Made by a program: the position numbers and the translations under genes. A DNA stretch of 62,802 nucleotides, the filler included, from Octopus bimaculoides (taxonomy: Eukaryota): NCBI RefSeq assembly GCF_001194135.2. It is 5 parts of 5 records of this genome, joined end to end, with 100 filler letters (N's around TTAATTAATTAA, not from the genome) between each part and the next. Parts side by side here need not be neighbours in the genome. Positions count along the whole stretch, not along the records: positions 38,611 to 48,104 come from NC_068998.1; 4 more parts are not named here. One strand, 5' to 3'. The notes below the pieces were generated by a model. That model was not told where the DNA came from, did not search any database, and saw only the letters and a list, made by a program, of their open reading frames with translations. Positions within the stretch are counted from its first letter, which is position 1; each line of letters starts with the position of its first letter. Of this stretch, positions 3,906 to 48,104 are shown in pieces.

Positions 3906-4713
3906 AATCACCTCACAAGGTAAGACCCTACTGATAGGCTTTATGCCGGGTGATGAGAGATTAAGGTATGATAGAGGGACTCAAACAGGTGTCCTGTAGT
4001 AAAGAAGATACATGATTACTTCAGTTGGAAAAGAGAGAAAATGGCAGTGAAAATGTGTCAGGGCATACCCTTGAAAGATGTATATAAGAGAAATGGTATG
4101 GTTAGGTAAGTTCATGAGAGTGTGAAACAAGGGTGAAAGATGGATAGAGATGGATACAGAGATGCAGTGATTGATGAACATGGATAAAATTTTAAACTTA
4201 TGTTAAATGAAAATATAAGAGTAATTTAAATAAATATTTCAACAAAATAAAAAGAATGGAAAAAAAATTTAATGTGTAAGCAGTTTAATTAGCATGCAAA
4301 ATAAAAGTAAGATTTATCCCCACCAAAAATCCAGGAAACTGGTAAGTATGTAATTATATTTGTGAAGAATCAAGCATTTAAGTCAAGCAAATTCAGTTTA
4401 CAGTAGCTAAATGAGTATGAGTTTTATACTCAATAATTTTACAGGCTTCTGCTATACAAAGGTAGGGCAACTATAGAAATGCATAAGGCCCCTACTTATA
4501 AAGATTTTCTGCAACAACCAACGGATTTTAATGTTTTGTTTTGTTTTTAAATACACACACCAATAAGAAAAGAATATTCATTCTTTGCATAGCATATTTA
4601 TTCCTTATATACCATTACTAGACATACTCTAATATAATCTACCACCCAACAAGCACTCACAACTATATGATTTTCTATTTGCTATTTTAACTACATAGGT
4701 AAAGACTTTAAAG

Positions 4714-5602
4714 CAGGAGTCACCAAAGGGGGTCTGAGGGATTACAGGGGGGTCAATGATGGCCAAGGGGTTGAATGGGGGTCGGCATGCGAAAGACCAC
4801 CTCACCCAGATGAAATGCTTGAAATAGTGCCATGAAACATGGGCAAACATGATAAATTTTTACTGCAGCGCGAAGTCTGCTTTTGCTAACGCTTGAGGCC
4901 TGATGTTGTCATCTGTATTGCAATCGAAAATTGAGAGATGTGATTGAGGGGATGCAGACTGTCAAGTGTTTGCTTATAGAAATTGCATGAACCTGGAGGA
5001 ACGAGGTGATTTGAGACTGAAACTGACCGACATTCAGCCTGATATCAATGCCTTGATTTAGGATCACCATGCTCATCCCTCACATTGATGTAGTCAGTTT
5101 CAATAAAAGATATTCCGGCGATATGATGCGTTTTTCACATTTTCTAACCGTGAAAAAAATTTCATAAAAATTGAAAGTTTAATACTGTATACTCGTATAT
5201 GTAGTTTTAAATGTAAAAAGTGAGTCATCTTCAAGAGAATTTCTTTATTTGTCGTACATATATATTTTAGCTAAGCACCCACTACACTCTTGGAGTGGTT
5301 GGTGTTAGGAAGGGCATCCAGCTGTAGAAACTCTGCCAGATCAGATTGGAGCCTAGTGCAGCCTTCTGGCTTGCCAGTCCTCAGTCAAATCATCCAACCC
5401 ATGCTAGCATGGAAAGCGAACATTAAACGATGATGATGATGATGATTTTAATTGCCAGCATCAGTACCCAGTACGCATGTAAGATATGGTATGGTAGGAT
5501 AAGGTATTAAGGTATTTTAAATGAGGAGGGTGGTTGATGCAGAAGGGGAATTGGCTAAAGGAGGTCAGGGGGTCGATGGTAAAAAAAGTTTGGCAACCCC
5601 TG
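4714..5602 (+). mobile_element. Non-autonomous hAT (Buster/Charlie-type) element with transposase C-terminal relic
   Basis: TIRs CAGGAGTCACCAAA / TTTGGCAACCCCTG; perfect 8-bp TSD CTTTAAAG (4706-4713 and 5603-5610, NNNTANNN). Internal translation RNCMNLEERGDLRLKLTDIQPDINALI*DHHAHPSH* matches the Buster-type hAT C-terminus. Confidence 0.88.
5272..5447 (-). mobile_element. Family D SINE-like repeat nested in the hAT element
   Basis: Reverse complement of 60097-60260 with a (GAT)n end. Confidence 0.85.
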
Positions 5603-5855
5603 CTTTAAAGAATGTCTGAAAGAAGTGCTATTCATGTTATTTTTCACTCTTTGATGTCTAATGAATCTAATCATCCAGTGATAGAGTAAGTGACTCAAGT
5701 TATCAAACTTGTATGATATAAATAAAATATAAGGTTTTCCCCCAGCTTCTTTGTAGATGGAGGGCTGAAAGTATTTTAGTTCACTTGCACTGAAAATAAT
5801 GGCACAGGGAAAAGGTATGAAAGTCACAGCATCAATACGTTTTATTATCAATTAT

Positions 5856-6230
<375 letters not shown>

Positions 6231-6989
6231 ATACATAGGTATGTATATATTTGCATATATATATATGTATATGTGTGTGTGCTTGCTACTGTATACGAAC
6301 TGTGGTGTTGATGCTGGCATCCCATGTTGACATCATGACCAGTTGCATTGTGCTTTCAAAGACCTGTTGGAATACAAAAATCCCTTACCTGATAAAACTA
6401 GGTGAGGGCTGGGGAACAGGAAGAGCATCCGGCTGTAAAAATCCTGCCTCAGAGATCAATTTCCTGTCCAACAGACTTTAAACAAATGATCAAACAAATG
6501 AACAAGTAATCTGCAGTTTCCTACCTAGTTTGAAACCAACTAAGATCGCAAGTGCCAGTGTTACATGGCTTAATAAGCTCTAACATATGACACGTATAAA
6601 TCTACTCTTCTAGACATACAATCAAACACCATACTACAGATAAAGTAAATAAATAAATGTATGTATATATGTATGTATGTACATATGTATATCATCATTG
6701 TCAGTAGTGAAACGAAATAAAATTGAAGTAAGTACAATGAAAGAATAGGTAATAGAGTGCGGCAGAAAGGTTGCCCTGATTTCAAAGGTTAATAAAAAAC
6801 AAACACATGAAGGTGCATGGAAAAACTTTGTATTTCTATGAAGTTCATTAAATGCCATTTTGTTTTACTGTTTCAGGTAGTACTCACCATGGCCTGATGG
6901 TGGAGACCATCATGCATTTGTTGTTGGAGAGTTTCTGTTTTTTTTATTAACTTTTGAAATTGGGGGCAAACTTTTTGATGCACCCTGTA

Positions 6990-7440
6990 CAATAATCCTT
7001 TCAACTATAGACACAAGGCCTGAAATTTTAGGGGAGGGGCATAGTCGATTACATCAACCTCCCAATGCTCAACTGGTACATACTTTATCGACCTCGAAAG
7101 AATGAATGGCAAAGTAAACTTCGGCAGAATTTGAACTTGGAGCGTAAAGACAAATGATATGCTGCCAGCTCCCCAATCAAAGAATATGAATAATAGTAAT
7201 AAGTCTTTCCAATTTTGGCTCGAGGTTAGCAATTTTAAGAGGAAGGCGTAAATTGATTACGTTGACCCCAGTGTCCATCTGCTACTTCTTTTGTCAACCC
7301 TGAAAGGAGGACAGGCAAAGTGGACCGCAGCAAAATTTGAACTAAAACGCAAAGAAAGATGAAATGTTGCTGAGCATTTGGTCCAGTGAGCCAAAGATTC
7401 TGCCAGCTGATCAACTTTGGTGTAATAATAATAATAATAA
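6990..7440 (-). mobile_element. Two family C SINE copies
   Basis: acaaggcctgaaatttta..agtcgattacatc..cagaatttgaact..ctgccagct blocks, followed by (AAT)n. Confidence 0.75.
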
Positions 7441-8286
7441 CAATTAAGAGTAAAATCATTATAACAGTATGATTAGAAAGACAATTGGATGCTGATACAG
7501 ATATCCCTATCAGTGAAATATATAAAAAAAAACAATAAAGTATAAAAAGAAGTAACGTTTTCTCACCCACCACACACACACACACACACACACACATGCA
7601 CACATATATACACACACACACACACACACATATATTTATCAATATTTAGCAGAAGCAACAGAGTGGCATAAGGGCCAAGAATGTTGTGTTTTGGCACTTA
7701 TCTGTTTGATAAGTGCTGCTACTAACATACAAAACTCTCAGCCCGTGAGTCACTCTGTTACTTCTACTAAATATTGATAAAAATATATACTCATATTTTA
7801 AGTTCTATTTTCCCTGCTAGTATCACCAAACTTGTATGTATGTATATAAATGTGTGCATGTATGTGTATATATATATATATATATANNNNNNNNNNNNNN
7901 NNNNNNNNNNNNNNNNNNNNNNNNNNNNNNNNNNNNNNNNNNNNNNNNNNNNNNNNNNNNNNNNNNNNNNNNNNNNNNNNNNNNNNNNNNNNNNNNNNNN
8001 NNNNNNNNNNNNNNNNNNNNNNNNNNNNNNNNNNNNNNNNNNNNNNNNNNNNNNNNNNNNNNNNNNNNNNNNNNNNNNNNNNNNNNNNNNNNNNNNNNNN
8101 NNNNNNNNNNNNNNNNNNNNNNNNNNNNNNNNNNNNNNNNNNNNNNNNNNNNNNNNNNNNNNNNNNNNNNNNNNNNNNNNNNNNNNNNNNNNNNNNNNNN
8201 NNNNNNNNNNNNNNNNNNNNNNNNNNNNNNNNNNNNNNNNNNNNNNNNNNNNNNNNNNNNNNNNNNNNNNNNNNNNNNNNNNNNNN

Positions 8287-8330
<44 letters not shown>

Positions 8331-10248
8331 CATATAAACACATATGAAGATATTCACATATACGTACCTGAAAAAAAAATCATTTATACTGTACCTACTA
8401 GTACCAACTAACACCAAATACTATCTATACAATCGCCAGTGACAGAAAGAATCCATTCTTTTGGTTTTGTTTGTCTTTTTGGCTTTAGTTTTTTTGTCTT
8501 TTCTTTACGGCAGCTAACCAAGGATGCGCAGTAAGTTAAAGAGTGAAAGATGAAATACAACAGCTTGACAACAGTTGGAAGTTAATTCATACTTACCAAT
8601 CAAATCTGAAATATAGAGAAGGAAGTCGTAAGCGAAAACAATTCACAGGCATAACTACTGAATCAGCAGTTGTTTCATAGTTTTGTCTTAAAATTAACAA
8701 TGATAAAGATCAAATCATACAGTTTACATGCAAACTAACTGATGGGATGTTAGTAGAGTGAAAAAAACGCTGGTGAACTTTTTAAGGTTGTTGTTTAGAG
8801 CTATCCCTCTGCACTGCAAAGCACTTTTAGTAAATGGCATGGACATATGGAACTAGCGGAAGGATTGCATTATGTTGCACTGAAGAATTTCTGTGATTTA
8901 TCTCTCTTAATCTAGAGAGTGAGTGAACAGGAGAGAGAGAGAACAGAAGAGAGAGGATAAGAAGGAGAGAGATAGGCAGACAAACAGACAGAGAGTGGCT
9001 ATAGTTCGGGGTGTCTGAGGTTCCAGTATCAGTAATAAATGGTGGAAAGGTAGTCAAGGTTGTGGCATGCTTTGAAACTGTCTTAGGGGTTGCTCCTCAT
9101 CTGTAAGCCCTGAACTCTTTTTGTTTATACTCATTTGTTTCTATAAGTATGAATGAATGTGTTTCTTTCTTTATCAATTCTAGAAAGATATATTATTAAA
9201 GAATCATGGCTTTCAATATATATCTGGATTAGCACACAACTAAATGCACTGGAAATGATGGCTATGAGCAAGTTCACATTGTAAAAAATATAAATTTAAT
9301 GAAAAATAGTTAAACTGAATAAATGGTAAGATAGTTTTATTCTATCATAATTACAGGATGGTCAAATATATTTTTTACTTGTCATCAAATTCATATTATA
9401 AGAAGCCTAATCAACAAGATGAATGTTATAAGTAAAAATGTTTAAATTTTTTACATCAAAAATATGCAGAAAACAGGGAAATGTCATCGAATACAGAAAG
9501 CAACACAGTATTCTCTGAAGTTAGTTGTGCATCCATACAAATCGGCAGAGATACGCTTTCACACAACTGAGTATTTGACAGTCGCACCTACCTATACAAG
9601 TGTATCTGAATGGTGAATACATTCACACAAATGAGTCTGCATGGTATATGTGTGTGTCACACAAGTGAGTCTGCATGGTATCTCACAGTGATAATGAATC
9701 TACAACAAGAGTGTCAACTGAGACAAACTACAAGTTTTTAGGTAACATGCAGTAGACTTAAAAAAAAACTATTCTCCCAACAGTACCAATTTACAAAAAG
9801 CTTATCTATTAATACTTAACTAAAACTAAAATACATGCATATATATATACATGTATATCTGAAAATGATACTCAAATAAGATTATCAAAAAAAAATTTTA
9901 AACTCAATTAAAAAAGGATTGGTAGTACAAACCTAACACAATGATGAAAACCCAGCCATAAAATCTCTTCCTCGCACAATTCATAGGAAAAAAATTCCAA
10001 ACCAGTTCTACTTCCAAACATTTTTTTTCTAAAAGTATACCCTTTTTTTTTCTAGACGTAACTTGCTATATTATACTGCCACAGAAAGAAATCAGGATTT
10101 CACTGGATACTCTTTTTACCATTAACTGCATGTAGATATGAAGCCAAATAATGTTGTCACTTTTTTAAAACCAACTCACCTAAAACTGCTCCTGGTTCTA
10201 TGATACAAACTTCTTGTTTGAAAGTGATCAAAATTAAAGATTTAAAGG

Positions 10249-38610: not shown

Positions 38611-39024
38611 GGGGGGGGGGGGAAGAAGACACCCTAAAAATTGCAAGAGGTAAGGTATTGAGGTAGAGCTGGAAATGCAGGGATCCAACTGAAGAGAAGT
38701 GGAAAAGAAGACCCAGAGTCGAGAACCGTACAGAAAAGTCGTCGGTGGTCTCTACTCTATATAGAGAGAAGGGCTTAAGTGTGGCTGGAGATGGCATGCA
38801 ATTAGTCAGTACAAGGGAGACAAAACAATTGCAGTTGTGACCGAATAGGTAGAGAGAGAGGCGACAGGGTGTTTGTGAGCCAGAAGCTGGAGTGTTGCTG
38901 GTTGTATTTTCTGTCTAACATTTTACAGTGCTCACAGGGGGGAAAAAATAGGCAACGATATTGTGGCAAGCAATTACAAAACGCTTTATCCAAACAAAAA
39001 TACTTGTGGTCGAGGTCATGGTCT

Positions 39025-39037
39025 TGATGATGATAAT

Positions 39038-39072
<35 letters not shown>

Positions 39073-39167
39073 TGATTATATGATTGACGACTACAACGAC
39101 TACAACGACGACGACTACAACGACGACGACGAAGACGACGACGACGAAGACGACGAAGACGACGACG
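39025..39167. repeat. (GAT)n/(GAC)n triplet array running into a gap
   Basis: Direct reading. Confidence 0.95.
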
Positions 39168-40216
39168 NNNNNNNNNNNNNNNNNNNNNNNNNNNNNNNNN
39201 NNNNNNNNNNNNNNNNNNNNNNNNNNNNNNNNNNNNNNNNNNNNNNNNNNNNNNNNNNNNNNNNNNNNNNNNNNNNNNNNNNNNNNNNNNNNNNNNNNNN
39301 NNNNNNNNNNNNNNNNNNNNNNNNNNNNNNNNNNNNNNNNNNNNNNNNNNNNNNNNNNNNNNNNNNNNNNNNNNNNNNNNNNNNNNNNNNNNNNNNNNNN
39401 NNNNNNNNNNNNNNNNNNNNNNNNNNNNNNNNNNNNNNNNNNNNNNNNNNNNNNNNNNNNNNNNNNNNNNNNNNNNNNNNNNNNNNNNNNNNNNNNNNNN
39501 NNNNNNNNNNNNNNNNNNNNNNNNNNNNNNNNNNNNNNNNNNNNNNNNNNNNNNNNNNNNNNNNNNNNNNNNNNNNNNNNNNNNNNNNNNNNNNNNNNNN
39601 NNNNNNNNNNNNNNNNNNNNNNNNNNNNNNNNNNNNNNNNNNNNNNNNNNNNNNNNNNNNNNNNNNNNNNNNNNNNNNNNNNNNNNNNNNNNNNNNNNNN
39701 NNNNNNNNNNNNNNNNNNNNNNNNNNNNNNNNNNNNNNNNNNNNNNNNNNNNNNNNNNNNNNNNNNNNNNNNNNNNNNNNNNNNNNNNNNNNNNNNNNNN
39801 NNNNNNNNNNNNNNNNNNNNNNNNNNNNNNNNNNNNNNNNNNNNNNNNNNNNNNNNNNNNNNNNNNNNNNNNNNNNNNNNNNNNNNNNNNNNNNNNNNNN
39901 NNNNNNNNNNNNNNNNNNNNNNNNNNNNNNNNNNNNNNNNNNNNNNNNNNNNNNNNNNNNNNNNNNNNNNNNNNNNNNNNNNNNNNNNNNNNNNNNNNNN
40001 NNNNNNNNNNNNNNNNNNNNNNNNNNNNNNNNNNNNNNNNNNNNNNNNNNNNNNNNNNNNNNNNNNNNNNNNNNNNNNNNNNNNNNNNNNNNNNNNNNNN
40101 NNNNNATATATATGTATATATATATATGAATGTATGTCTATATATAGATGCAATCATATATATATGCATGTGTGTTTGTATTCATATATGTATACACAGA
40201 CATACACATACATACA

Positions 40217-40252
<36 letters not shown>

Positions 40253-42391
40253 TACACGCGCACACGCACATACACACACATACACGCACACACATACGTA
40301 GAATCGGTAGAGAGTCGGACGAAAGTGTCTTGCGGTATTTCTTCCGGCGCTTCATGTTCCGATTTCAAAATACCGCCGAGATTGAACATGTCTTTAATTT
40401 TCCTGAGATCGATAACATAAACGAAACACCAATCAATTATTGGCATCTCGTGTTGTCGATGATGAACAGTAACGAATGATCCTAATATCCTTTTCTCTAA
40501 AATTTCTGGCCTTGTGTTTAAAACAAGAAGGTATTACATTCGCCGTGTGTTGGTTGTATCGTAAGATCATCGGAAGAAACTAATTGCTTTGCGGCATTCG
40601 TTCCGACTTTTTACGATGCGAGTTCGTATCTTACGGAAGCCATGTTTTGCCTTTCATCTTTCCGGGATTTGATTTTAGAAATTAAAGTATTGGGCCATCC
40701 CATAAATAATGCAGGTTTTTTTTTTAATTGCATGAATTAGAGTCGAATGGGGACGGGATAAACTAACTGCATCAACTTGCTATAGAAGCAGGTAGTAAAT
40801 TTCCTTGTCCTTATTCTTAGTGCAAGTTTTGAAGAGTGTAGTTCAATTTTAACAGTTATTTTTTTCAAAGTGAGAGCGTTGGAAGAAATGCTTTGTGTTA
40901 TTCCGGCTTTTTTATATGCCGAGTTCAAATTCTTACAACGTCAACATCTTATTCCATCCCACCTGGGTCGACGCAATAAAGTACCAGTAAAATATTGAGG
41001 GCAATTGTTATCCACTAAATCCCCTTCGTTTAAAGATTCTTACACTTCTACAGTTGGAAAACAAAACAAAGAAAAAAGAAGAATTTTGTGGTATTTCTTC
41101 CGACATTTTACATTCTCAGTTCAGATCCTGGTTTACTTCCTGAATTAGAAACCACAACTAACAGAAGAAGAAAGGAAAACGGTTCTNNNNNNNNNNNNNN
41201 NNNNNNNNNNNNNNNNNNNNNNNNNNNNNNNNNNNNNNNNNNNNNNNNNNNNNNNNNNNNNNNNNNNNNNNNNNNNNNNNNNNNNNNNNNNNNNNNNNNN
41301 NNNNNNNNNNNNNNNNNNNNNNNNNNNNNNNNNNNNNNNNNNNNNNNNNNNNNNNNNNNNNNNNNNNNNNNNNNNNNNNNNNNNNNNNNNNNNNNNNNNN
41401 NNNNNNNNNNNNNNNNNNNNNNNNNNNNNNNNNNNNNNNNNNNNNNNNNNNNNNNNNNNNNNNNNNNNNNNNNNNNNNNNNNNNNNNNNNNNNNNNNNNN
41501 NNNNNNNNNNNNNNNNNNNNNNNNNNNNNNNNNNNNNNNNNNNNNNNNNNNNNNNNNNNNNNNNNNNNNNNNNNNNNNNNNNNNNNNNNNNNNNNNNNNN
41601 NNNNNNNNNNNNNNNNNNNNNNNNNNNNNNNNNNNNNNNNNNNNNNNNNNNNNNNNNNNNNNNNNNNNNNNNNNNNNNNNNNNNNNNNNNNNNNNNNNNN
41701 NNNNNNNNNNNNNNNNNNNNNNNNNNNNNNNNNNNNNNNNNNNNNNNNNNNNNNNNNNNNNNNNNNNNNNNNNNNNNNNNNNNNNNNNNNNNNNNNNNNN
41801 NNNNNNNNNNNNNNNNNNNNNNNNNNNNNNNNNNNNNNNNNNNNNNNNNNNNNNNNNNNNNNNNNNNNNNNNNNNNNNNNNNNNNNNNNNNNNNNNNNNN
41901 NNNNNNNNNNNNNNNNNNNNNNNNNNNNNNNNNNNNNNNNNNNNNNNNNNNNNNNNNNNNNNNNNNTATATATACATACATATCTATATGAGTATATATG
42001 TACACATACATACATATATACATGTGCGTGTGTGTGTGTGGGGGTGTATAAAATCTGTTTTGTTTGTTTTAATTTTAATATATTATTTTATCTTCATTCT
42101 CCTTTCAGTTAAATATTATTTGATTATCTGATATCTTTGTTTTATTGTGTCTGAAGAGTTTGAAGATTTCGTTGTTGCAAACGAACGTAAGTTCATATAC
42201 TACACACACAAACGCACACACACAGGCGCGCACACACACACACACACCTTAAAGCCACTCCATAACTAGTCTAAGCGAGGCGTGTGCGCAGTCGAGAGTG
42301 TGTCTATGTGTATATATACATACATATTTAAATATACATATATATATATATACGCACACATATATACATACATATATATACATATACATAC

Positions 42392-42447
<56 letters not shown>

Positions 42448-43879
42448 CAATTAGAAAATGGAGGATAATATGCTGAACCCCACTACTTGCAGACGGTGTA
42501 TCCTATTGAATTCATTAATTTAATTCATAGCAGAAGTGACAAAAAAAGGAAGAAAAGAAAGAGAAAGAAAGAACCAAAGCACAGGTGTCCATGGCAGACT
42601 ATGTTATTTTGCCAACGTGGTTTACATATAGAAGTACAAAGTACATAAGGAATTAGAGGATGAATAGAAGTTCAATCTTACAGCTGTTTCGGCCTAGTTT
42701 TGGCAGGCCCCATTCTATCCGAATATTCCTTTCCGGAGTGATTATCGGATGACATTTTGAAATGTCTGCAAGTAGTTGGGTTCAGCATATTATCCTCCAT
42801 TTTCTAATTGTTACACAAATTTTGGGTAAAACCTCCACTTTTNNNNNNNNNNNNNNNNNNNNNNNNNNNNNNNNNNNNNNNNNNNNNNNNNNNNNNNNNN
42901 NNNNNNNNNNNNNNNNNNNNNNNNNNNNNNNNNNNNNNNNNNNNNNNNNNNNNNNNNNNNNNNNNNNNNNNNNNNNNNNNNNNNNNNNNNNNNNNNNNNN
43001 NNNNNNNNNNNNNNNNNNNNNNNNNNNNNNNNNNNNNNNNNNNNNNNNNNNNNNNNNNNNNNNNNNNNNNNNNNNNNNNNNNNNNNNNNNNNNNNNNNNN
43101 NNNNNNNNNNNNNNNNNNNNNNNNNNNNNNNNNNNNNNNNNNNNNNNNNNNNNNNNNNNNNNNNNNNNNNNNNNNNNNNNNNNNNNNNNNNNNNNNNNNN
43201 NNNNNNNNNNNNNNNNNNNNNNNNNNNNNNNNNNNNNNNNNNNNNNNNNNNNNNNNNNNNNNNNNNNNNNNNNNNNNNNNNNNNNNNNNNNNNNNNNNNN
43301 NNNNNNNNNNNNNNNNNNNNNNNNNNNNNNNNNNNNNNNNNNNNNNNNNNNNNNNNNNNNNNNNNNNNNNNNNNNNNNNNNNNNNNNNNNNNNNNNNNNN
43401 NNNNNNNNNNNNNNNNNNNNNNNNNNNNNNNNNNNNNNNNNNNNNNNNNNNNNNNNNNNNNNNNNNNNNNNNNNNNNNNNNNNNNNNNNNNNNNNNNNNN
43501 NNNNNNNNNNNNNNNNNNNNNNNNNNNNNNNNNNNNNNNNNNNNNNNNNNNNNNNNNNNNNNNNNNNNNNNNNNNNNNNNNNNNNNNNNNNNNNNNNNNN
43601 NNNNNNNNNNNNNNNNNNNNNNNNNNNNNNNNNNNNNNNNNNNNNNNNNNNGTCACAAGGACGTAAACAAACTGACACCGATTGTCAAGCGGTGATGTGG
43701 GTGACACGTACAGACACGAAGACACACACACACAAACACACATGCGCATGACGAGCTTCCACACAGTTTCCATCTACCAAATTCAATCTCGAGACATCGG
43801 TCGTCCATGGGTTATAGTATAAGACACCTACTTAAGCCACCACGCGGTGGGACCGAACTCGAAATCACTTGGTTGTGAT

Positions 43880-44150
43880 TATGATGAAGATGATGACGAC
43901 GACGACGATGATGAAGGTTAATGGGGACGAGAAGTAGGTATGAGGGTGGAGGAGGAGGAGGACGAGGAGGACGAGGACGAGGACGAGGACGAGGAGAAGG
44001 ACGAGGAGGAGGAAGAAGACGAGGAGGAGGACGAGGAGAAGGACGAGGAGGAGGAAGAAGACGAGGAGGAGGACGAGGAAGAGGAGGACGAGGAGGAGGA
44101 CGAGGACGAGGACGAGGAGGAGGACGAAGAGGAGGACGAAGAGGAGGAGC
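43880..44150. repeat. GAG/GAC/GAA purine-rich triplet array with a higher-order duplicated block
   Basis: gaggacgaggagaaggacgaggaggaggaagaagacgaggag occurs twice. Confidence 0.9.
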
Positions 44151-45447
44151 GTGTGAGGAAGCGAAAGAAATGGAGAGACAAAGAGACAAAAGCCCCAGTT
44201 TTTGTGAAAACAGAGCTTATTGTTGAATCCGAAGTAAAAGTACGCGTGCAATATTCTCCGAGTAGATTAGTTTAATAAATTATGCAAGTTTTTACTTATC
44301 GCAAAACCGATTTTGATTGAGGATTTTTGCGGATTGTTTTCGTGTTGAAGAAAATTAATTAGGCAAGATGCAGTTACGAATAAATAATCTTATTTATATT
44401 GATGTTGAAATAGGAAGGAAAAGAATTGTTCCTCGTTCCATTTTCATTTCCGAACGACACCAAATAAGAATTCCTTTCGATGCCATCTTCCATTCAAGAT
44501 ATTAACCCTTTCTATTCGAACCCGTCTGAAACGGCTCCTGAGTCTATCACATAAAACATTTTCATTCAAAAAGAAATAATATTTTCTTCTAATTTTGGGC
44601 ACTAAGCCAGCAATTTTCAGAGGAGGGGAAAATTGATTACATAGATATTTATTTCATGGACCCTGAGAAAATGAAATGTAAAGTTGACCTCAGCGGCATT
44701 TCAACTCAGTAAAATAAAACCGGAGGAAATGCTGCTAAGCATTTTATCCGGCACGGTAAAGATTCTGCCAAGCTCGCCGTCTTATATATACGTCTATATA
44801 TACTGTTTGCGAAAATTTCTTAATGTTAACAATAAATCAAATGTGTTTCTTAGTTGCTAGGACTAAATGACATATAAATTTCTTCGAGAGAGAACTTAAC
44901 CAGTATGAGGCCGATATGTCTGGAAATGTTTTGCAAGAACTTAATAAGATTAACGGTAAATAGAAGGCATTTCTCAGTTGCGAAAAAGGAAACTGCGATG
45001 CCTTTGGGGAATAATAATGAACAAAACTAGTCTAATTGATGCAAAATATTTATGATGTACTCAAACACTAATTATGTTCTAATGTTGAGATAATACTAAC
45101 ATGCCAAAAGGTTTTCCGGTGATTTTTCTTAATGCGGACATTAGATTTATGTTTCATGTTTGTTGTGTATAAACAAAGTGAATATATTAATATTTATCAT
45201 AAGCACAAGGATACAGTTTTTGAACAGTATTAAGGGTAATTGATTAAATTGACTTTAATTCGATGTATAAACCAAAATAAATTCAATTATTAAGATTGAG
45301 ATTTCATTCATTTATTTTTAGTGATTCCCGAAAGGATGAAATATTTGACTGGCTCCGGCGAGATTTGAACATGGAACCTCATAACATCCTGTTGTTCGAT
45401 ATGCATAATTACATACATGCATACATATAAATATAAAAGTATAATGC

Positions 45448-45628
<181 letters not shown>

Positions 45629-46876
45629 GGATTCAGATAGAATCGGGTACTTGAAAGGATATGCACCAGATTGGGTTGGATAAACCCGTGGTCACCGCCT
45701 GTGGTTGATAAATATCAACTAGGATATTCCAGTTGGGTACACAGAGAAAACCAACTCTATGAGTATTTAGCGTCAAGGGAGTGGTCCAAAGCATACGTTA
45801 CGTTGATTGTATTGTTGTCGGTATACTCCAGGGTGTCCGACGTGTCTTAAAATTCTATGCTGCATTATAATCAATATATATATATATATATATATATANN
45901 NNNNNNNNNNNNNNNNNNNNNNNNNNNNNNNNNNNNNNNNNNNNNNNNNNNNNNNNNNNNNNNNNNNNNNNNNNNNNNNNNNNNNNNNNNNNNNNNNNNN
46001 NNNNNNNNNNNNNNNNNNNNNNNNNNNNNNNNNNNNNNNNNNNNNNNNNNNNNNNNNNNNNNNNNNNNNNNNNNNNNNNNNNNNNNNNNNNNNNNNNNNN
46101 NNNNNNNNNNNNNNNNNNNNNNNNNNNNNNNNNNNNNNNNNNNNNNNNNNNNNNNNNNNNNNNNNNNNNNNNNNNNNNNNNNNNNNNNNNNNNNNNNNNN
46201 NNNAATACGTGACCAAGTTGTTAGGGTACCCGATTGCAAGATCATGGCTTCGATTACCGGACCGGATGATGATTAATTTTCTTGAGCAAAACACTTCTTT
46301 TCACGTTCTGCTCTGAGTGATTCTGTCTAGCCAATGAGTGGTGTACTACAAGTTGATATGCCTTGGTTCTTTATAAATCCTGTATAATTAAAAATATGCA
46401 TACATATATGTGCATAAATACATATATGCTTATATATCTATATATAAATAATAAATACATAAATAAATAAATAAATAAATACTTATGTGCATAGTATTTT
46501 AATGAGAATAATTCTATTCATATTTACTAAATACACATACTAAAAATTAAAAATTCAAATTCTTGAATCCATGTACTTAAAATTAAAACGCAAAATAGAA
46601 AAATTATTACGATATTATTTATTTTTTAAATTCATTCTATTTTATTTGATTTCATGTCCACAATTAAGTCAGACATTAAGATATTGTGTTTTCTGACAGA
46701 TTAAAGAAAATTATAAATTATATACCTTAATTGCAAATATGTTCTCATCGAATTATATACATTCGCTTAATTGGAAATATTATCTCGATATTTTTTAGGT
46801 ATTTATTCATACGAAAATATTTAAATCAAACACATATACATACATAAACACATGTCTGCATTCATACATACATACA

Positions 46877-46910
<34 letters not shown>

Positions 46911-47092
46911 CATACATACATACATACATACATAAATACGTACGAATGTACGTACATACATACATACATACACACGTACGTACATACATATATACATACG
47001 TACATACATACATACATACACACATGCATACATCCATCCATCCATACATACATACATACATACATACATACATACATACATACATACATACA

Positions 47093-47540
47093 ACAGGCTT
47101 GATATAATGGTTTGAGATAGACAGAAGAAACAGTGCACAGTTGTGAAAATTAGTTGCCCAGCGGATGTTAACATCAAGCTGAAGATCAGTAAAAAAATAG
47201 AACACATATGCTGAACTTTTGGTAAATCTGCAGTTACTCTATCCAGATTACAAGTTCAGGTTTATACCTGTAATTATTAGGGCCCTGGGATATGTAACAC
47301 ATTGTCTTAATACCAATCTTGAGAAATTAGGCATCTCAAAACCAGAAAAGAGAAAACTAATCCGAAGACTACAGATTCAATCCTTCACTGGAACTGTAAA
47401 AATCTGTGAAACTTTCCAGAAGTTTATCATTAAATATATATGTTGTTGATGTTGAAATTCCAATGAAGGAGCCTTGGATCTAGGCTAGAAACCGGTTTTT
47501 TTCTCTATTGACAAAATATCTTGAAATAAACTGAATAATG
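47093..47540 (+). mobile_element. 5'-truncated R4/Dong-clade retrotransposon (RLE domain + 3' UTR) in (CATA)n
   Basis: NRLDIMV*DRQKKQCTVVKISCPADVNIKLKIS..(frameshift)..LVNLQLLYPDYKFRFIPVIIRALG..KLIRRLQIQSFTGTVKICETFQKF; (CATA)n at 46862-47092 and 47542-47586. Confidence 0.9.
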
Positions 47541-47551
47541 ACATACATACA

Positions 47552-47583
<32 letters not shown>

Positions 47584-47685
47584 CATTTAATATATAACAA
47601 AGTTATAGACCGATTGACTGAAATGACGAACTATATGCATTTTAAAGTATGATAAAGTAAATTCTTTACCGCCAAATATTAACGC

Positions 47686-47716
<31 letters not shown>

Positions 47717-48104
47717 TGCGCGTGCGCGTGTTTGTAGAATACGCAAATACAGGCAAATCATCATGTACGAAAATAAGACAATGCTGGATAAGAACCAGCG
47801 ACCGCGTGATTACGAAGCGAATTTCTTAAACATCGCGACATGCCTGCATCTTATTTATGAATTGGTGTGTATATGCATTGTATGTATATACGTATAATGC
47901 ACATATGTACATTCGCACGTATGTATGCATATAACACACACACACACTTATATGTATATATACCCACAAATACATACATACATACATAATATACACATGT
48001 AGACGTCCACACGTAGGCATATATATGAATATATAAATTTATGTGTGCGCATGTCTATGTCTGTGCATACTTATATTTGTACATATATACATATACATAC
48101 ATAT

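What the first reader, a model, noticed from the sequence alone, without database searches (positions are those of the whole stretch)
46862..47586. (CATA)n-targeting R4/Dong-clade retrotransposon family, copy 2
The RLE domain plus 3' UTR is embedded between a long upstream (CATA)n and a downstream (CATA)n. Its C-terminus (LIRRLQIQSFTGTVKICETF) differs from the (AAT)n-associated Dong copies 2 kb away. Dong targeting of TAA repeats is established, whereas I do not know of a (CATA)n-specific RLE lineage. It could be an undescribed tetranucleotide-specific endonuclease and might help seed the abundant (CATA)n arrays.
Basis: partly seen in the sequence, partly recalled or inferred. Interest (0 to 1): 0.75.

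Follow-up and report, generated by a model that had tools for sequence, protein, structure and literature searches.

The report
Dead LINE tail inside (CATA)n repeat
This is a broken, 450-base tail end of an octopus retrotransposon that carries a restriction-like endonuclease, sitting inside a CATA microsatellite. Relatives elsewhere also sit in short tandem repeats, so it looks like one more member of the known class of microsatellite-targeting elements rather than a new kind of system.

Summary
Window 47093-47540 is a 448-bp insert between an imperfect (CATA)n array (46836-47092) and a perfect (ACAT)10 array (47541-47581).

The insert is the 3' end of a non-LTR retrotransposon with a restriction-like endonuclease (RLE). 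It holds only the last ~113 codons of the nuclease plus a ~90-bp 3'UTR. It is dead: one in-frame stop, a 1-bp frameshift and a Glu-to-Lys change at an invariant position.

Full-length relatives are single ORFs of 1069-1225 aa with a central RT and a C-terminal CCHC+RLE. Their closest solved structures are R2 proteins.

(CATA)n association recurs at four loci:
- the window, on both sides;
- an independent O. vulgaris paralogue, on the 5' side;
- two metagenomic relatives, one on the 5' side and one on the 3' side.

Other relatives sit in (CTTA)n or (TAG)n.

Microsatellite targeting by RLE elements is already established: Dong (TAA)n, Togen (TG)n and some HERO families. Dong-R4 LINEs are known to be abundant in octopus.

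R4/Dong clade membership could not be tested because no reference sequences were available. Novelty against Repbase/Dfam could not be checked.

Verdict: partly supported, probably a new member of a known kind, modest interest.

The parts
46836..47092 (+). Upstream imperfect (CATA)n array of 257 bp with CGTA, CACA and CATC variants. Presumed pre-existing target microsatellite.
   Evidence: TRF period 4, 64.2 copies, 86% matches; sequence.
47090..47092 (+). 5' junction microhomology 'ACA', shared by the array pattern and the element consensus (C)ACAACAG.
   Evidence: Comparison of the window with relative L006 'cacaacagacctgat'.
47092..47214 (+). Degenerate coding remnant, first frame: NRLDIMV*DRQKKQCTVVKISCPADVNIKLKISKKIEHIC*. 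This is the PD strand, the E strand and the start of the K..Y helix of the RLE.
   Evidence: Translation; tblastn to P0002-P0007; alignments A1 and A2.
47113..47115 (+). In-frame TGA replacing the near-invariant Trp of the '(I/V)W(D/N)' motif.
47146..47148 (+). Lys codon at the position of the invariant Glu (E247 of P0012) of the nuclease core.
   Evidence: Alignments A1 and A2.
47188..47200 (+). A-run holding a 1-bp insertion relative to the O. vulgaris paralogue; this is the frameshift.
   Evidence: Window 'agtaaaaaaatagaacacatatgct' (25 nt) against L001 'agtgaaaacgaaaacacctatgct' (24 nt).
47210..47449 (+). Coding remnant, second frame: AELLVNLQLLYPDYKFRFIPVIIRALGYV...TVKICETFQKFIIKYICC, with the stop codon at 47447-47449.
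   Evidence: ORF list and translation; 86% aa identity to the O. vulgaris copy.
47450..47540 (+). 3'UTR, ending ...gaaataaactgaataatg(ac).
   Evidence: 88% nt identity to L001 5478-5577.
47541..47581 (+). Downstream perfect (ACAT)10 array: either the remaining target, the element-borne repeat tail, or both.
   Evidence: TRF 100% matches.

Best explanation
Window 47093-47540 is a dead, 5'-truncated copy of a roughly 4-kb non-LTR retrotransposon. About 450 bp survive. The element belongs to the restriction-like-endonuclease group (single ORF: N-terminal region, RT, CCHC, PD-(D/E)XK nuclease). It most likely belongs to the Dong-R4-type LINEs already annotated in octopus genomes.

It entered a (CATA)n microsatellite by target-primed reverse transcription. 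The bottom strand of the repeat was nicked, and its (TATG)n 3' end primed on the element RNA, whose 3'UTR ends in or next to CAUA units. Reverse transcription stopped inside the nuclease coding region. The cDNA end was joined to the upstream repeat through a 3-nt microhomology.

The family and its nearer relatives appear to prefer CATA-type repeats. Sister lineages use (CTTA)n or (TAG)n. The copy then decayed.

Shown here: the homology, the truncation, the lesions, the flanks, the recurrence of such flanks in other copies, and the architecture and fold of relatives.

Inferred: the TPRT steps, a family-wide preference, and R4/Dong membership.
For: Homology:
- Protein hits have E 1e-15 to 1e-37, led by Octopus proteins.
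- A profile of the domain finds 6902 relatives.

Architecture of relatives:
- Full-length relatives are 1069-1225 aa with RVT_1 only and no AP-endonuclease domain.
- phmmer to PDB hits R2 proteins at E 1e-24.
- An AlphaFold model of the C-terminal 341 aa of relative P0012 (pLDDT 85-95 over the nuclease core) matches the R2 proteins of zebra finch, turtle and silkmoth, with probability 1.0, E 4e-9 to 2e-4, and rmsd about 3 A over ~228 columns for the best superpositions. The next hits are other PD-(D/E)XK nucleases.

Target evidence:
- Window: arrays on both sides.
- L001, an O. vulgaris paralogue with different flanks and a different truncation point: directly preceded by (CATC)n(CATA)3.
- L002, a relative with 46% identity: its 5'-truncated copy starts right after CATGCATCCATACATCCATACATACA.
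- L073, 56% identity: the 3'UTR runs into catacctacatacatgcatacat, where the contig ends.
- Base rate of same-strand CATA arrays is about 1-3.5%.

Clade context:
- L069 holds an intact 1149-aa relative and a truncated copy. They are bounded by (CTTC)n(CTTA)n upstream and (CTTA)n downstream.
- L064 has (CTTA)3..(ACTC)n(ACTG)56 upstream and (CTTA)3CTG downstream.
- L075 is flanked by (TAG)27 and (AGT)6.7.

Literature:
- RLE LINEs are mostly target-specific, and their targets include microsatellites (PMC4640811).
- R4/Dong elements insert into rDNA or microsatellites (PMC7998251).
- O. vulgaris has 5 recently active Dong-R4 families with 1129 insertions (PMC13282606).
Against: - Only two octopus copies could be examined; no octopus genome was searchable.
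- The O. vulgaris copy has at most one or two CATA units downstream (aataatgac|tgacatatatat).
- The old Argonauta copy (L007) and relative L003 show no repeat within the sequence available after the stop codon.
- (CATA)n is common in this genome.
- The copies L001, L074 and L006 carry a CATA/CA-rich tract inside the 3'UTR just after the stop codon. Some '3' flank' repeats may therefore be internal to the element.
- In a short NJ tree, the CATA-associated and CTTA-associated relatives do not separate cleanly.
- No reference R4, Dong, HERO or NeSL sequence was available for a phylogeny.
Confidence: 0.72

Rival explanations
1. Chance landing of a non-specific LINE. The element merely carries its own (CATA)n 3' tail, as many LINEs carry microsatellite tails, and inserts anywhere. 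The upstream array is a coincidence in a genome rich in (CATA)n.
For: - The piece holds several other CATA arrays (40207-40246, 42005-42016, 47973-47988, and the reverse-strand array at 47687-47718).
- L001 has almost no array downstream.
- Some relatives show no flanking repeat.
Against: - Three independent 5'-truncated copies (window, L001, L002) have different truncation points and different outer flanks, yet each begins immediately after a same-strand CATN tract.
- At a 1-3.5% base rate this is about 1e-6 to 4e-5.
- Sister lineages show the same both-sides pattern with other motifs.
Confidence: 0.1
2. The flanking arrays are made or grown by the element rather than being its pre-existing target. 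Two routes are possible. The reverse transcriptase could jump to, or slip on, the CAUA tail of an RNA at the 5' junction. Alternatively, a short seed at the junction could expand after insertion.
For: - In all five events with both flanks visible, the 5' array is much longer than the 3' array: window 257 vs 41 bp, L001 about 75 vs 8 or fewer, L064 about 395 vs 15, L069 truncated copy 148 vs 40, L075 81 vs 20.
- In L064 the same 15 bp, CTTACTTACTTACTG, lies at the outer edge of the upstream array and at the 3' junction. This looks like a target duplication with about 380 bp of (ACTC)n(ACTG)n added in between.
- End-to-end template jumping is a known property of R2 reverse transcriptase (my own knowledge; not checked against a paper here).
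Against: - The upstream arrays are compound and degenerate, while the downstream arrays are pure: 86% vs 100% in the window, mostly CATC in L001, CTTC then CTTA in L069. That fits older, pre-existing microsatellites better than arrays copied from the element's tail at insertion.
- Five events give only P about 0.03 one-sided.
Confidence: 0.12
3. Classification rival. The family is an RLE LINE but belongs to HERO, or to a NeSL/Togen-like or an unnamed clade, rather than R4/Dong.
For: - No reference sequences could be compared.
- Some HERO families and the Togen families are also microsatellite-specific (PMC4640811).
- O. vulgaris also has Hero families (PMC13282606).
- Rfam found no HDV-like ribozyme at two relatives' 5' ends.
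- The N-terminal Myb-like motif was not detected by Pfam or by a PDB profile search.
Against: - Dong-R4 is by far the dominant RLE LINE class in octopus annotations: 1129 versus 13 recent insertions (PMC13282606).
- Full-length relatives lack N-terminal zinc fingers and share a W-x2-EE...GY...W...P...Q motif. This matches the architecture reported for R4/Dong (PMC7998251).
Confidence: 0.3

Closest known systems
Dong (R4 clade; Bombyx mori, Anopheles, Biomphalaria, Darwinula)
   Same: Single-ORF LINE with RT plus a C-terminal restriction-like endonuclease. It inserts into a microsatellite and is flanked by the repeat on both sides. It has no N-terminal zinc fingers. The class is annotated as abundant in octopus.
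   Different: [quoted passage not shown] Here the flanks are the tetranucleotide (CATA)n. Phylogenetic membership was not tested.
R4 (Ascaris and other nematodes)
   Same: Same RLE architecture and the same clade as Dong in the literature.
   Different: R4 targets a specific site in 28S rDNA, not a microsatellite.
Togen and microsatellite-specific HERO families (RLE LINEs)
   Same: RLE LINEs specific for simple repeats; Togen targets (TG)n (PMC4640811).
   Different: Different repeat motif. The relationship to this family is unknown.
Waldo (R1 clade)
   Same: Targets (ACAY)n microsatellites, which include ACAT = CATA (PMC3812793).
   Different: Waldo uses an AP-type endonuclease at the N-terminus. 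Relatives of this element have no such domain and carry a C-terminal RLE.
R2 (solved structures 8GH6, 9DOU, 9NL2, 9NL3)
   Same: Best sequence and structural match for the RT and for the linker/CCHC/RLE module. Presumably the same TPRT mechanism.
   Different: R2 targets 28S rDNA and has N-terminal zinc fingers plus Myb. Structure-based sequence identity to the modelled C-terminal region (linker, CCHC, RLE) is only 14-16%, and phmmer aligns the RT (for two chains also the linker) but not the nuclease.

Membership tests
RLE-bearing non-LTR retrotransposons (R2 group) | C-terminal CCHC motif followed by a PD-(D/E)XK restriction-like nuclease | tested here: met
   Relatives:
- C..C...H....C, RHD, (K/R)PD, E.SCP.D.N...K...Y and GALG are conserved in A2.
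- The AlphaFold model matches the R2 C-terminal module.

Window copy: only the part from the PD strand onward is present, and it is mutated.
RLE-bearing non-LTR retrotransposons (R2 group) | Reverse transcriptase in the same ORF and no AP endonuclease | tested here: met
   - P0129, P0203, P0230 and P0212 show RVT_1 only.
- The L069 ORF of 1149 aa is intact.
- This region is absent from the window copy because of 5' truncation.
R4/Dong clade | RT phylogeny groups with Ascaris R4 and Bombyx Dong | not testable with these tools
   No reference R4, Dong, Rex6, HERO or NeSL sequence could be fetched. The protein databases carry no clade names.
R4/Dong clade | Diverged N-terminal Myb/SANT-like domain without zinc fingers (PMC7998251) | tested here: inconclusive
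   - Seven full-length relatives share W-x2-EE..Y..GY..W..P..Q near the N-terminus, and their N-terminal sequences show no obvious Cys/His zinc-finger pattern (inspection only).
- Pfam and a PDB profile search gave no significant Myb/SANT hit.
R4/Dong clade | Insertion into rDNA or a microsatellite, with (TAA)n typical for Dong | tested here: inconclusive
   Microsatellite flanks are present, but the motifs are (CATA)n, (CTTA)n and (TAG)n, not (TAA)n.
R4/Dong clade | HDV-like self-cleaving ribozyme at the 5' end (PMC3774820) | tested here: inconclusive
   - Rfam scans of the 5' regions of the L069 and L075 relatives found nothing at E<=1.
- Rfam models may not cover these ribozymes.
- The window copy has no 5' end.
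R2 clade | 28S rDNA target and N-terminal zinc finger plus Myb | tested here: not met
   The flanks are microsatellites, and no zinc-finger pattern is evident in the relatives' N-termini, judged by inspection.
Waldo / R1 clade, (ACAY)n-specific | N-terminal AP-type endonuclease | tested here: not met
   No Exo_endo_phos domain in full-length relatives; they have a C-terminal RLE instead.

The most novel reading that the evidence does not exclude
The window fragment belongs to an undescribed radiation of R4/Dong-like RLE retrotransposons. Its lineages have repeatedly switched among tri- and tetranucleotide microsatellite targets: (CATA)n in cephalopods and some other marine animals, (CTTA)n and (TAG)n elsewhere. 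They insert near the 3' edge of arrays, and the array on the 5' side grows afterwards. The elements would then both exploit and enlarge simple repeats.
Probability: 0.3. Interest if true: 0.55.

Novelty: new member of a known kind. Interest (0 to 1): 0.3.

Why it matters
Target-specific RLE retrotransposons such as R2 are being developed as tools for site-directed DNA insertion. A set of close relatives that differ mainly in which short repeat they enter would be a natural experiment on how target choice is encoded.

For cephalopod genomics, the finding would explain part of the association between Dong-R4-type LINEs and the very abundant (CATA)n arrays. It would also explain assembly gaps next to them.

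The window copy itself is an inert relic with no function.

Tried and rejected
1. A scan of JGI metagenome contigs with the 18-mer at the 3'UTR end gave 51 chance hits, none homologous.
2. Single-sequence protein searches with the window peptide and with an octopus composite returned only 7 and 6 proteins. The database holds almost no octopus copies, so no genome-wide flank survey was possible.
3. The multi-contig proteins P0097 and P0121 turned out to be the same locus in several assemblies, not independent insertions.
4. The GTDB genome scan gave one distant relative in a mis-binned archaeal MAG. The IMG/VR scan gave none.
5. Pfam on the window peptide gave only a sub-threshold SAM_TNK hit, which I rejected.
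6. Pfam and a PDB profile search for an N-terminal Myb/SANT domain gave nothing significant.
7. Rfam found no HDV-like ribozymes.
8. Self-BLAST and tblastn of the piece found no second copy and no coding remnant beside the (ATA)60 array.
9. In-phase reconstruction of the empty site is possible (element 47090-47540). It is uninformative because the junctions are ambiguous by 3-4 nt.
10. Literature searches found no paper describing a (CATA)n-specific RLE LINE. Absence from this library does not show absence from Repbase or Dfam.

Full report
**What is there.**
The piece (38611-48104) is draft eukaryotic sequence with four N gaps and many simple repeats.

TRF reports an imperfect (ATAC)64 array at 46836-47092 (86% matches). 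It also reports a perfect (ACAT)10 at 47541-47581. The 448 bp between them are not repetitive.

Translation of this stretch gives two reading segments:
- In one frame: NRLDIMV*DRQKKQCTVVKISCPADVNIKLKISKKIEHIC*.
- After a shift of one base: AELLVNLQLLYPDYKFRFIPVIIRALGYVTHCLNTNLEKLGISKPEKRKLIRRLQIQSFTGTVKICETFQKFIIKYICC*, with the stop codon at 47447-47449.

About 90 bp of 3'UTR follow, ending ...gaaataaactgaataatga.

**What it is homologous to.**
The joined peptide finds seven proteins at E 1e-15 to 1e-37. They include a hypothetical protein of Octopus vulgaris (85% identity) and XP_014788340 of O. bimaculoides. So the piece is octopus or a close relative.

A profile of these sequences finds 304 proteins in the word-indexed database and 6902 in the exhaustive representative library.

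Longer relatives show conserved motifs in this order: C..C....H....C, RHD, (K/R)PD, E.SCP.D.N...K..EK..Y, and P.I.GALG. This matches the CCHC / RH / PD / D-E / K..KY layout described for the R2 endonuclease (PMC4838377).

Full-length relatives are single ORFs of 1069-1225 aa. They have a central RVT_1 domain and no AP-endonuclease domain.

Their best matches among solved structures are R2 retrotransposon proteins, E 1e-24, aligned over the RT (and the linker for two chains) but not the nuclease. An AlphaFold model of the C-terminal 341 aa of relative P0012 has pLDDT 85-95 across the nuclease core. It superposes on the linker/CCHC/RLE part of zebra-finch, turtle and silkmoth R2, with probability 1.0 and E down to 4e-9. 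Other PD-(D/E)XK nucleases follow.

The family is therefore an RLE-type non-LTR retrotransposon.

**State of the window copy.**
It starts at the PD strand of the nuclease. It lacks the CCHC, the RH helix, the RT and the N-terminus, so about 450 bp of a roughly 4-kb element survive.

It carries three lesions:
- TGA in place of a near-invariant Trp (47113-47115).
- Lys in place of the invariant Glu of the 'IE.SCP.D' strand (47146-47148).
- A 1-bp insertion in an A-run (about 47188-47200) relative to the O. vulgaris paralogue.

It is about 88-90% identical in nucleotides to that paralogue. It is an old, dead, 5'-truncated copy. No other copy or coding remnant of this superfamily exists in the piece.

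**Is the (CATA)n context more than chance?**
Outside the two focal arrays, same-strand CATA tracts cover 1.1% (strict) to 3.5% (loose) of the piece. They cover 0.8% of a 10-kb O. vulgaris locus.

The O. vulgaris paralogue (L001, OX597824.1 near 40.53 Mb) has unrelated outer flanks and a different truncation point, starting at ..SENENTYAELL. It is directly preceded by catccaaccaaccatccatccgtccatcc...catccatacatacatac. Downstream it has only ...aataatgac|tgacatatatat.

Two relatives from other samples add junctions:
- L002 (46% identity): a 5'-truncated copy begins right after CATGCATCCATACATCCATACATACA.
- L073 (56% identity): a ~125-bp 3'UTR runs into catacctacatacatgcatacat, where the contig breaks.

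That makes three independent 5' junctions and two 3' junctions with CATN units.

Against this:
- The old Argonauta copy and L003 show no repeat in the sequence available.
- Several copies carry a CATA/CA-rich tract inside the 3'UTR just after the stop codon. Not every downstream repeat is therefore a flank.

**The wider clade.**
L069 contains an intact 1149-aa element with a ~650-bp 3'UTR ending at (CTTA)5.
- It is nested, with a 70-bp duplication, at a TTACTTAC site inside an older truncated relative.
- That older copy lies between (CTTC)n(CTTA)n (148 bp) and (CTTA)10.

L064, from the same unknown organism, has (CTTA)3CTG..(ACTC)n(ACTG)56 upstream and (CTTA)3CTG at its 3' end.

L075 is a distant relative in a contig binned as a Nitrosopumilaceae MAG. 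It is a ~2-kb copy between (TAG)27 and (AGT)6.7.

Residence in a short tandem repeat is thus a clade-wide trait, and the motif varies. A short NJ tree does not sort lineages cleanly by motif.

**Mechanism.**
The best reading is ordinary target-primed reverse transcription into a microsatellite:
1. The repeat is nicked.
2. The (TATG)n bottom strand primes on an RNA whose 3' end carries or abuts CAUA units.
3. The cDNA terminates early.
4. The 5' end is joined through microhomology. ACA at 47090-47092 is shared by the array and the element consensus.

These steps are inferred from what is known for R2 and for Dong-type elements. None was observed here.

In R2, site choice lies mainly in N-terminal DNA-binding modules. 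A diverged Myb-like module has been proposed to do the same in Dong-like elements (PMC7998251). Full-length relatives here share a W-x2-EE..GY..W..P..Q motif near the N-terminus, and their N-terminal sequences show no obvious zinc-finger (Cys/His) pattern on inspection. Neither Pfam nor a PDB profile search could confirm a Myb fold.

**Unexplained asymmetry.**
In all five events where both flanks are visible, the 5' array is several-fold longer than the 3' array:

| Event | 5' array (bp) | 3' array (bp) |
|---|---|---|
| Window | 257 | 41 |
| L001 | ~75 | 8 or fewer |
| L064 | ~395 | 15 |
| L069 truncated copy | 148 | 40 |
| L075 | 81 | 20 |

In L064 an identical 15-mer brackets both the long array and the element.

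This could mean insertion near the 3' edge of arrays. It could instead mean growth of the repeat at the 5' junction. The upstream arrays are compound and degenerate while the downstream ones are pure, which favours pre-existing targets. Five events are too few to decide.

**Comparison with what is known.**
- RLE LINEs are mostly target-specific, and their targets include microsatellites: Dong (TAA)n, Togen (TG)n and some HERO families (PMC4640811, PMC3812793, PMC7998251).
- (ACAY)n is a known LINE target, but for the AP-endonuclease element Waldo.
- Dong-R4 LINEs are an abundant, partly active component of octopus genomes (PMC13282606, PMC8967140).
- I found no paper describing a (CATA)n-specific RLE lineage. 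Repbase and Dfam could not be consulted.
- R4/Dong membership could not be tested for lack of reference sequences. It is inferred from the octopus annotations and from the zinc-finger-free N-terminus.

**Verdict.**
The element is an RLE LINE relic in a (CATA)n array, and a CATA preference for its lineage is reasonably supported. This is another target variant within a well-known kind of element, not a new system. Interest is modest.

Noticed in passing
window 45448-45898: An (ATA)60 array with an internal (ATG)11 block is followed by about 270 bp with no RT or RLE coding similarity to any of 285 family proteins. On the minus strand the unique sequence ends directly at (TTA)n, so a non-coding Dong-type 3'UTR is possible but untested.
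   Followed up: partly
L075 (CBDBMG010000002.1, 'Nitrosopumilaceae archaeon' MAG) 4005-9017: A contig binned as archaeal carries a eukaryotic-type RLE LINE copy between (TAG)n arrays, plus a 1.4-kb 19-bp satellite. It is very likely eukaryotic DNA mis-binned into the MAG.
   Followed up: partly
L069 4318-9582: An intact 1149-aa relative is nested inside an older truncated relative at a TTACTTAC site, with a 70-bp duplication (4465-4534 = 8800-8869). A 52-bp stretch made of the end of a (CTTA)n array plus about 30 bp of unique sequence ('aattattcNcaagtttttgctgcagata') occurs twice. This suggests either 3' transduction or a true 3' terminus lying beyond the array.
   Followed up: partly
L064 3597-3993 and 7720-7734: The identical 15-mer CTTACTTACTTACTG lies at the outer edge of a ~395-bp (ACTC)n(ACTG)n array and at the element's 3' junction. 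It looks like a target duplication with the long array added between it and the 5' end.
   Followed up: no
L001 5405-5478; L074 after 490; L006 after 490: A variable CATA/CA-rich tract sits inside the 3'UTR immediately after the stop codon in several copies. The window copy has only 'atatatat' there.
   Followed up: partly
window 47566-47590 vs L001 5577-5594: The 18 nt beyond the 3'UTR end are 15/18 identical between the two octopus copies (CATACATATACATTTAAT vs CTGACATATATATTTAAT). This may be chance in AT-rich DNA, or a hint that the true 3' terminus lies after the repeat.
   Followed up: no
window 39025-39167 and 43876-44149: Long (GAT/GAC)n and (GAGGAC)n tracts read as poly-Asp/Glu in one frame. 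Both abut N gaps or other repeats. There is no evidence that they are coding.
   Followed up: no
window piece and L001: CATA-type tracts are strongly strand-biased relative to the element: 528 vs 70 covered bases in the piece, and 143 vs 0 in L001.
   Followed up: no
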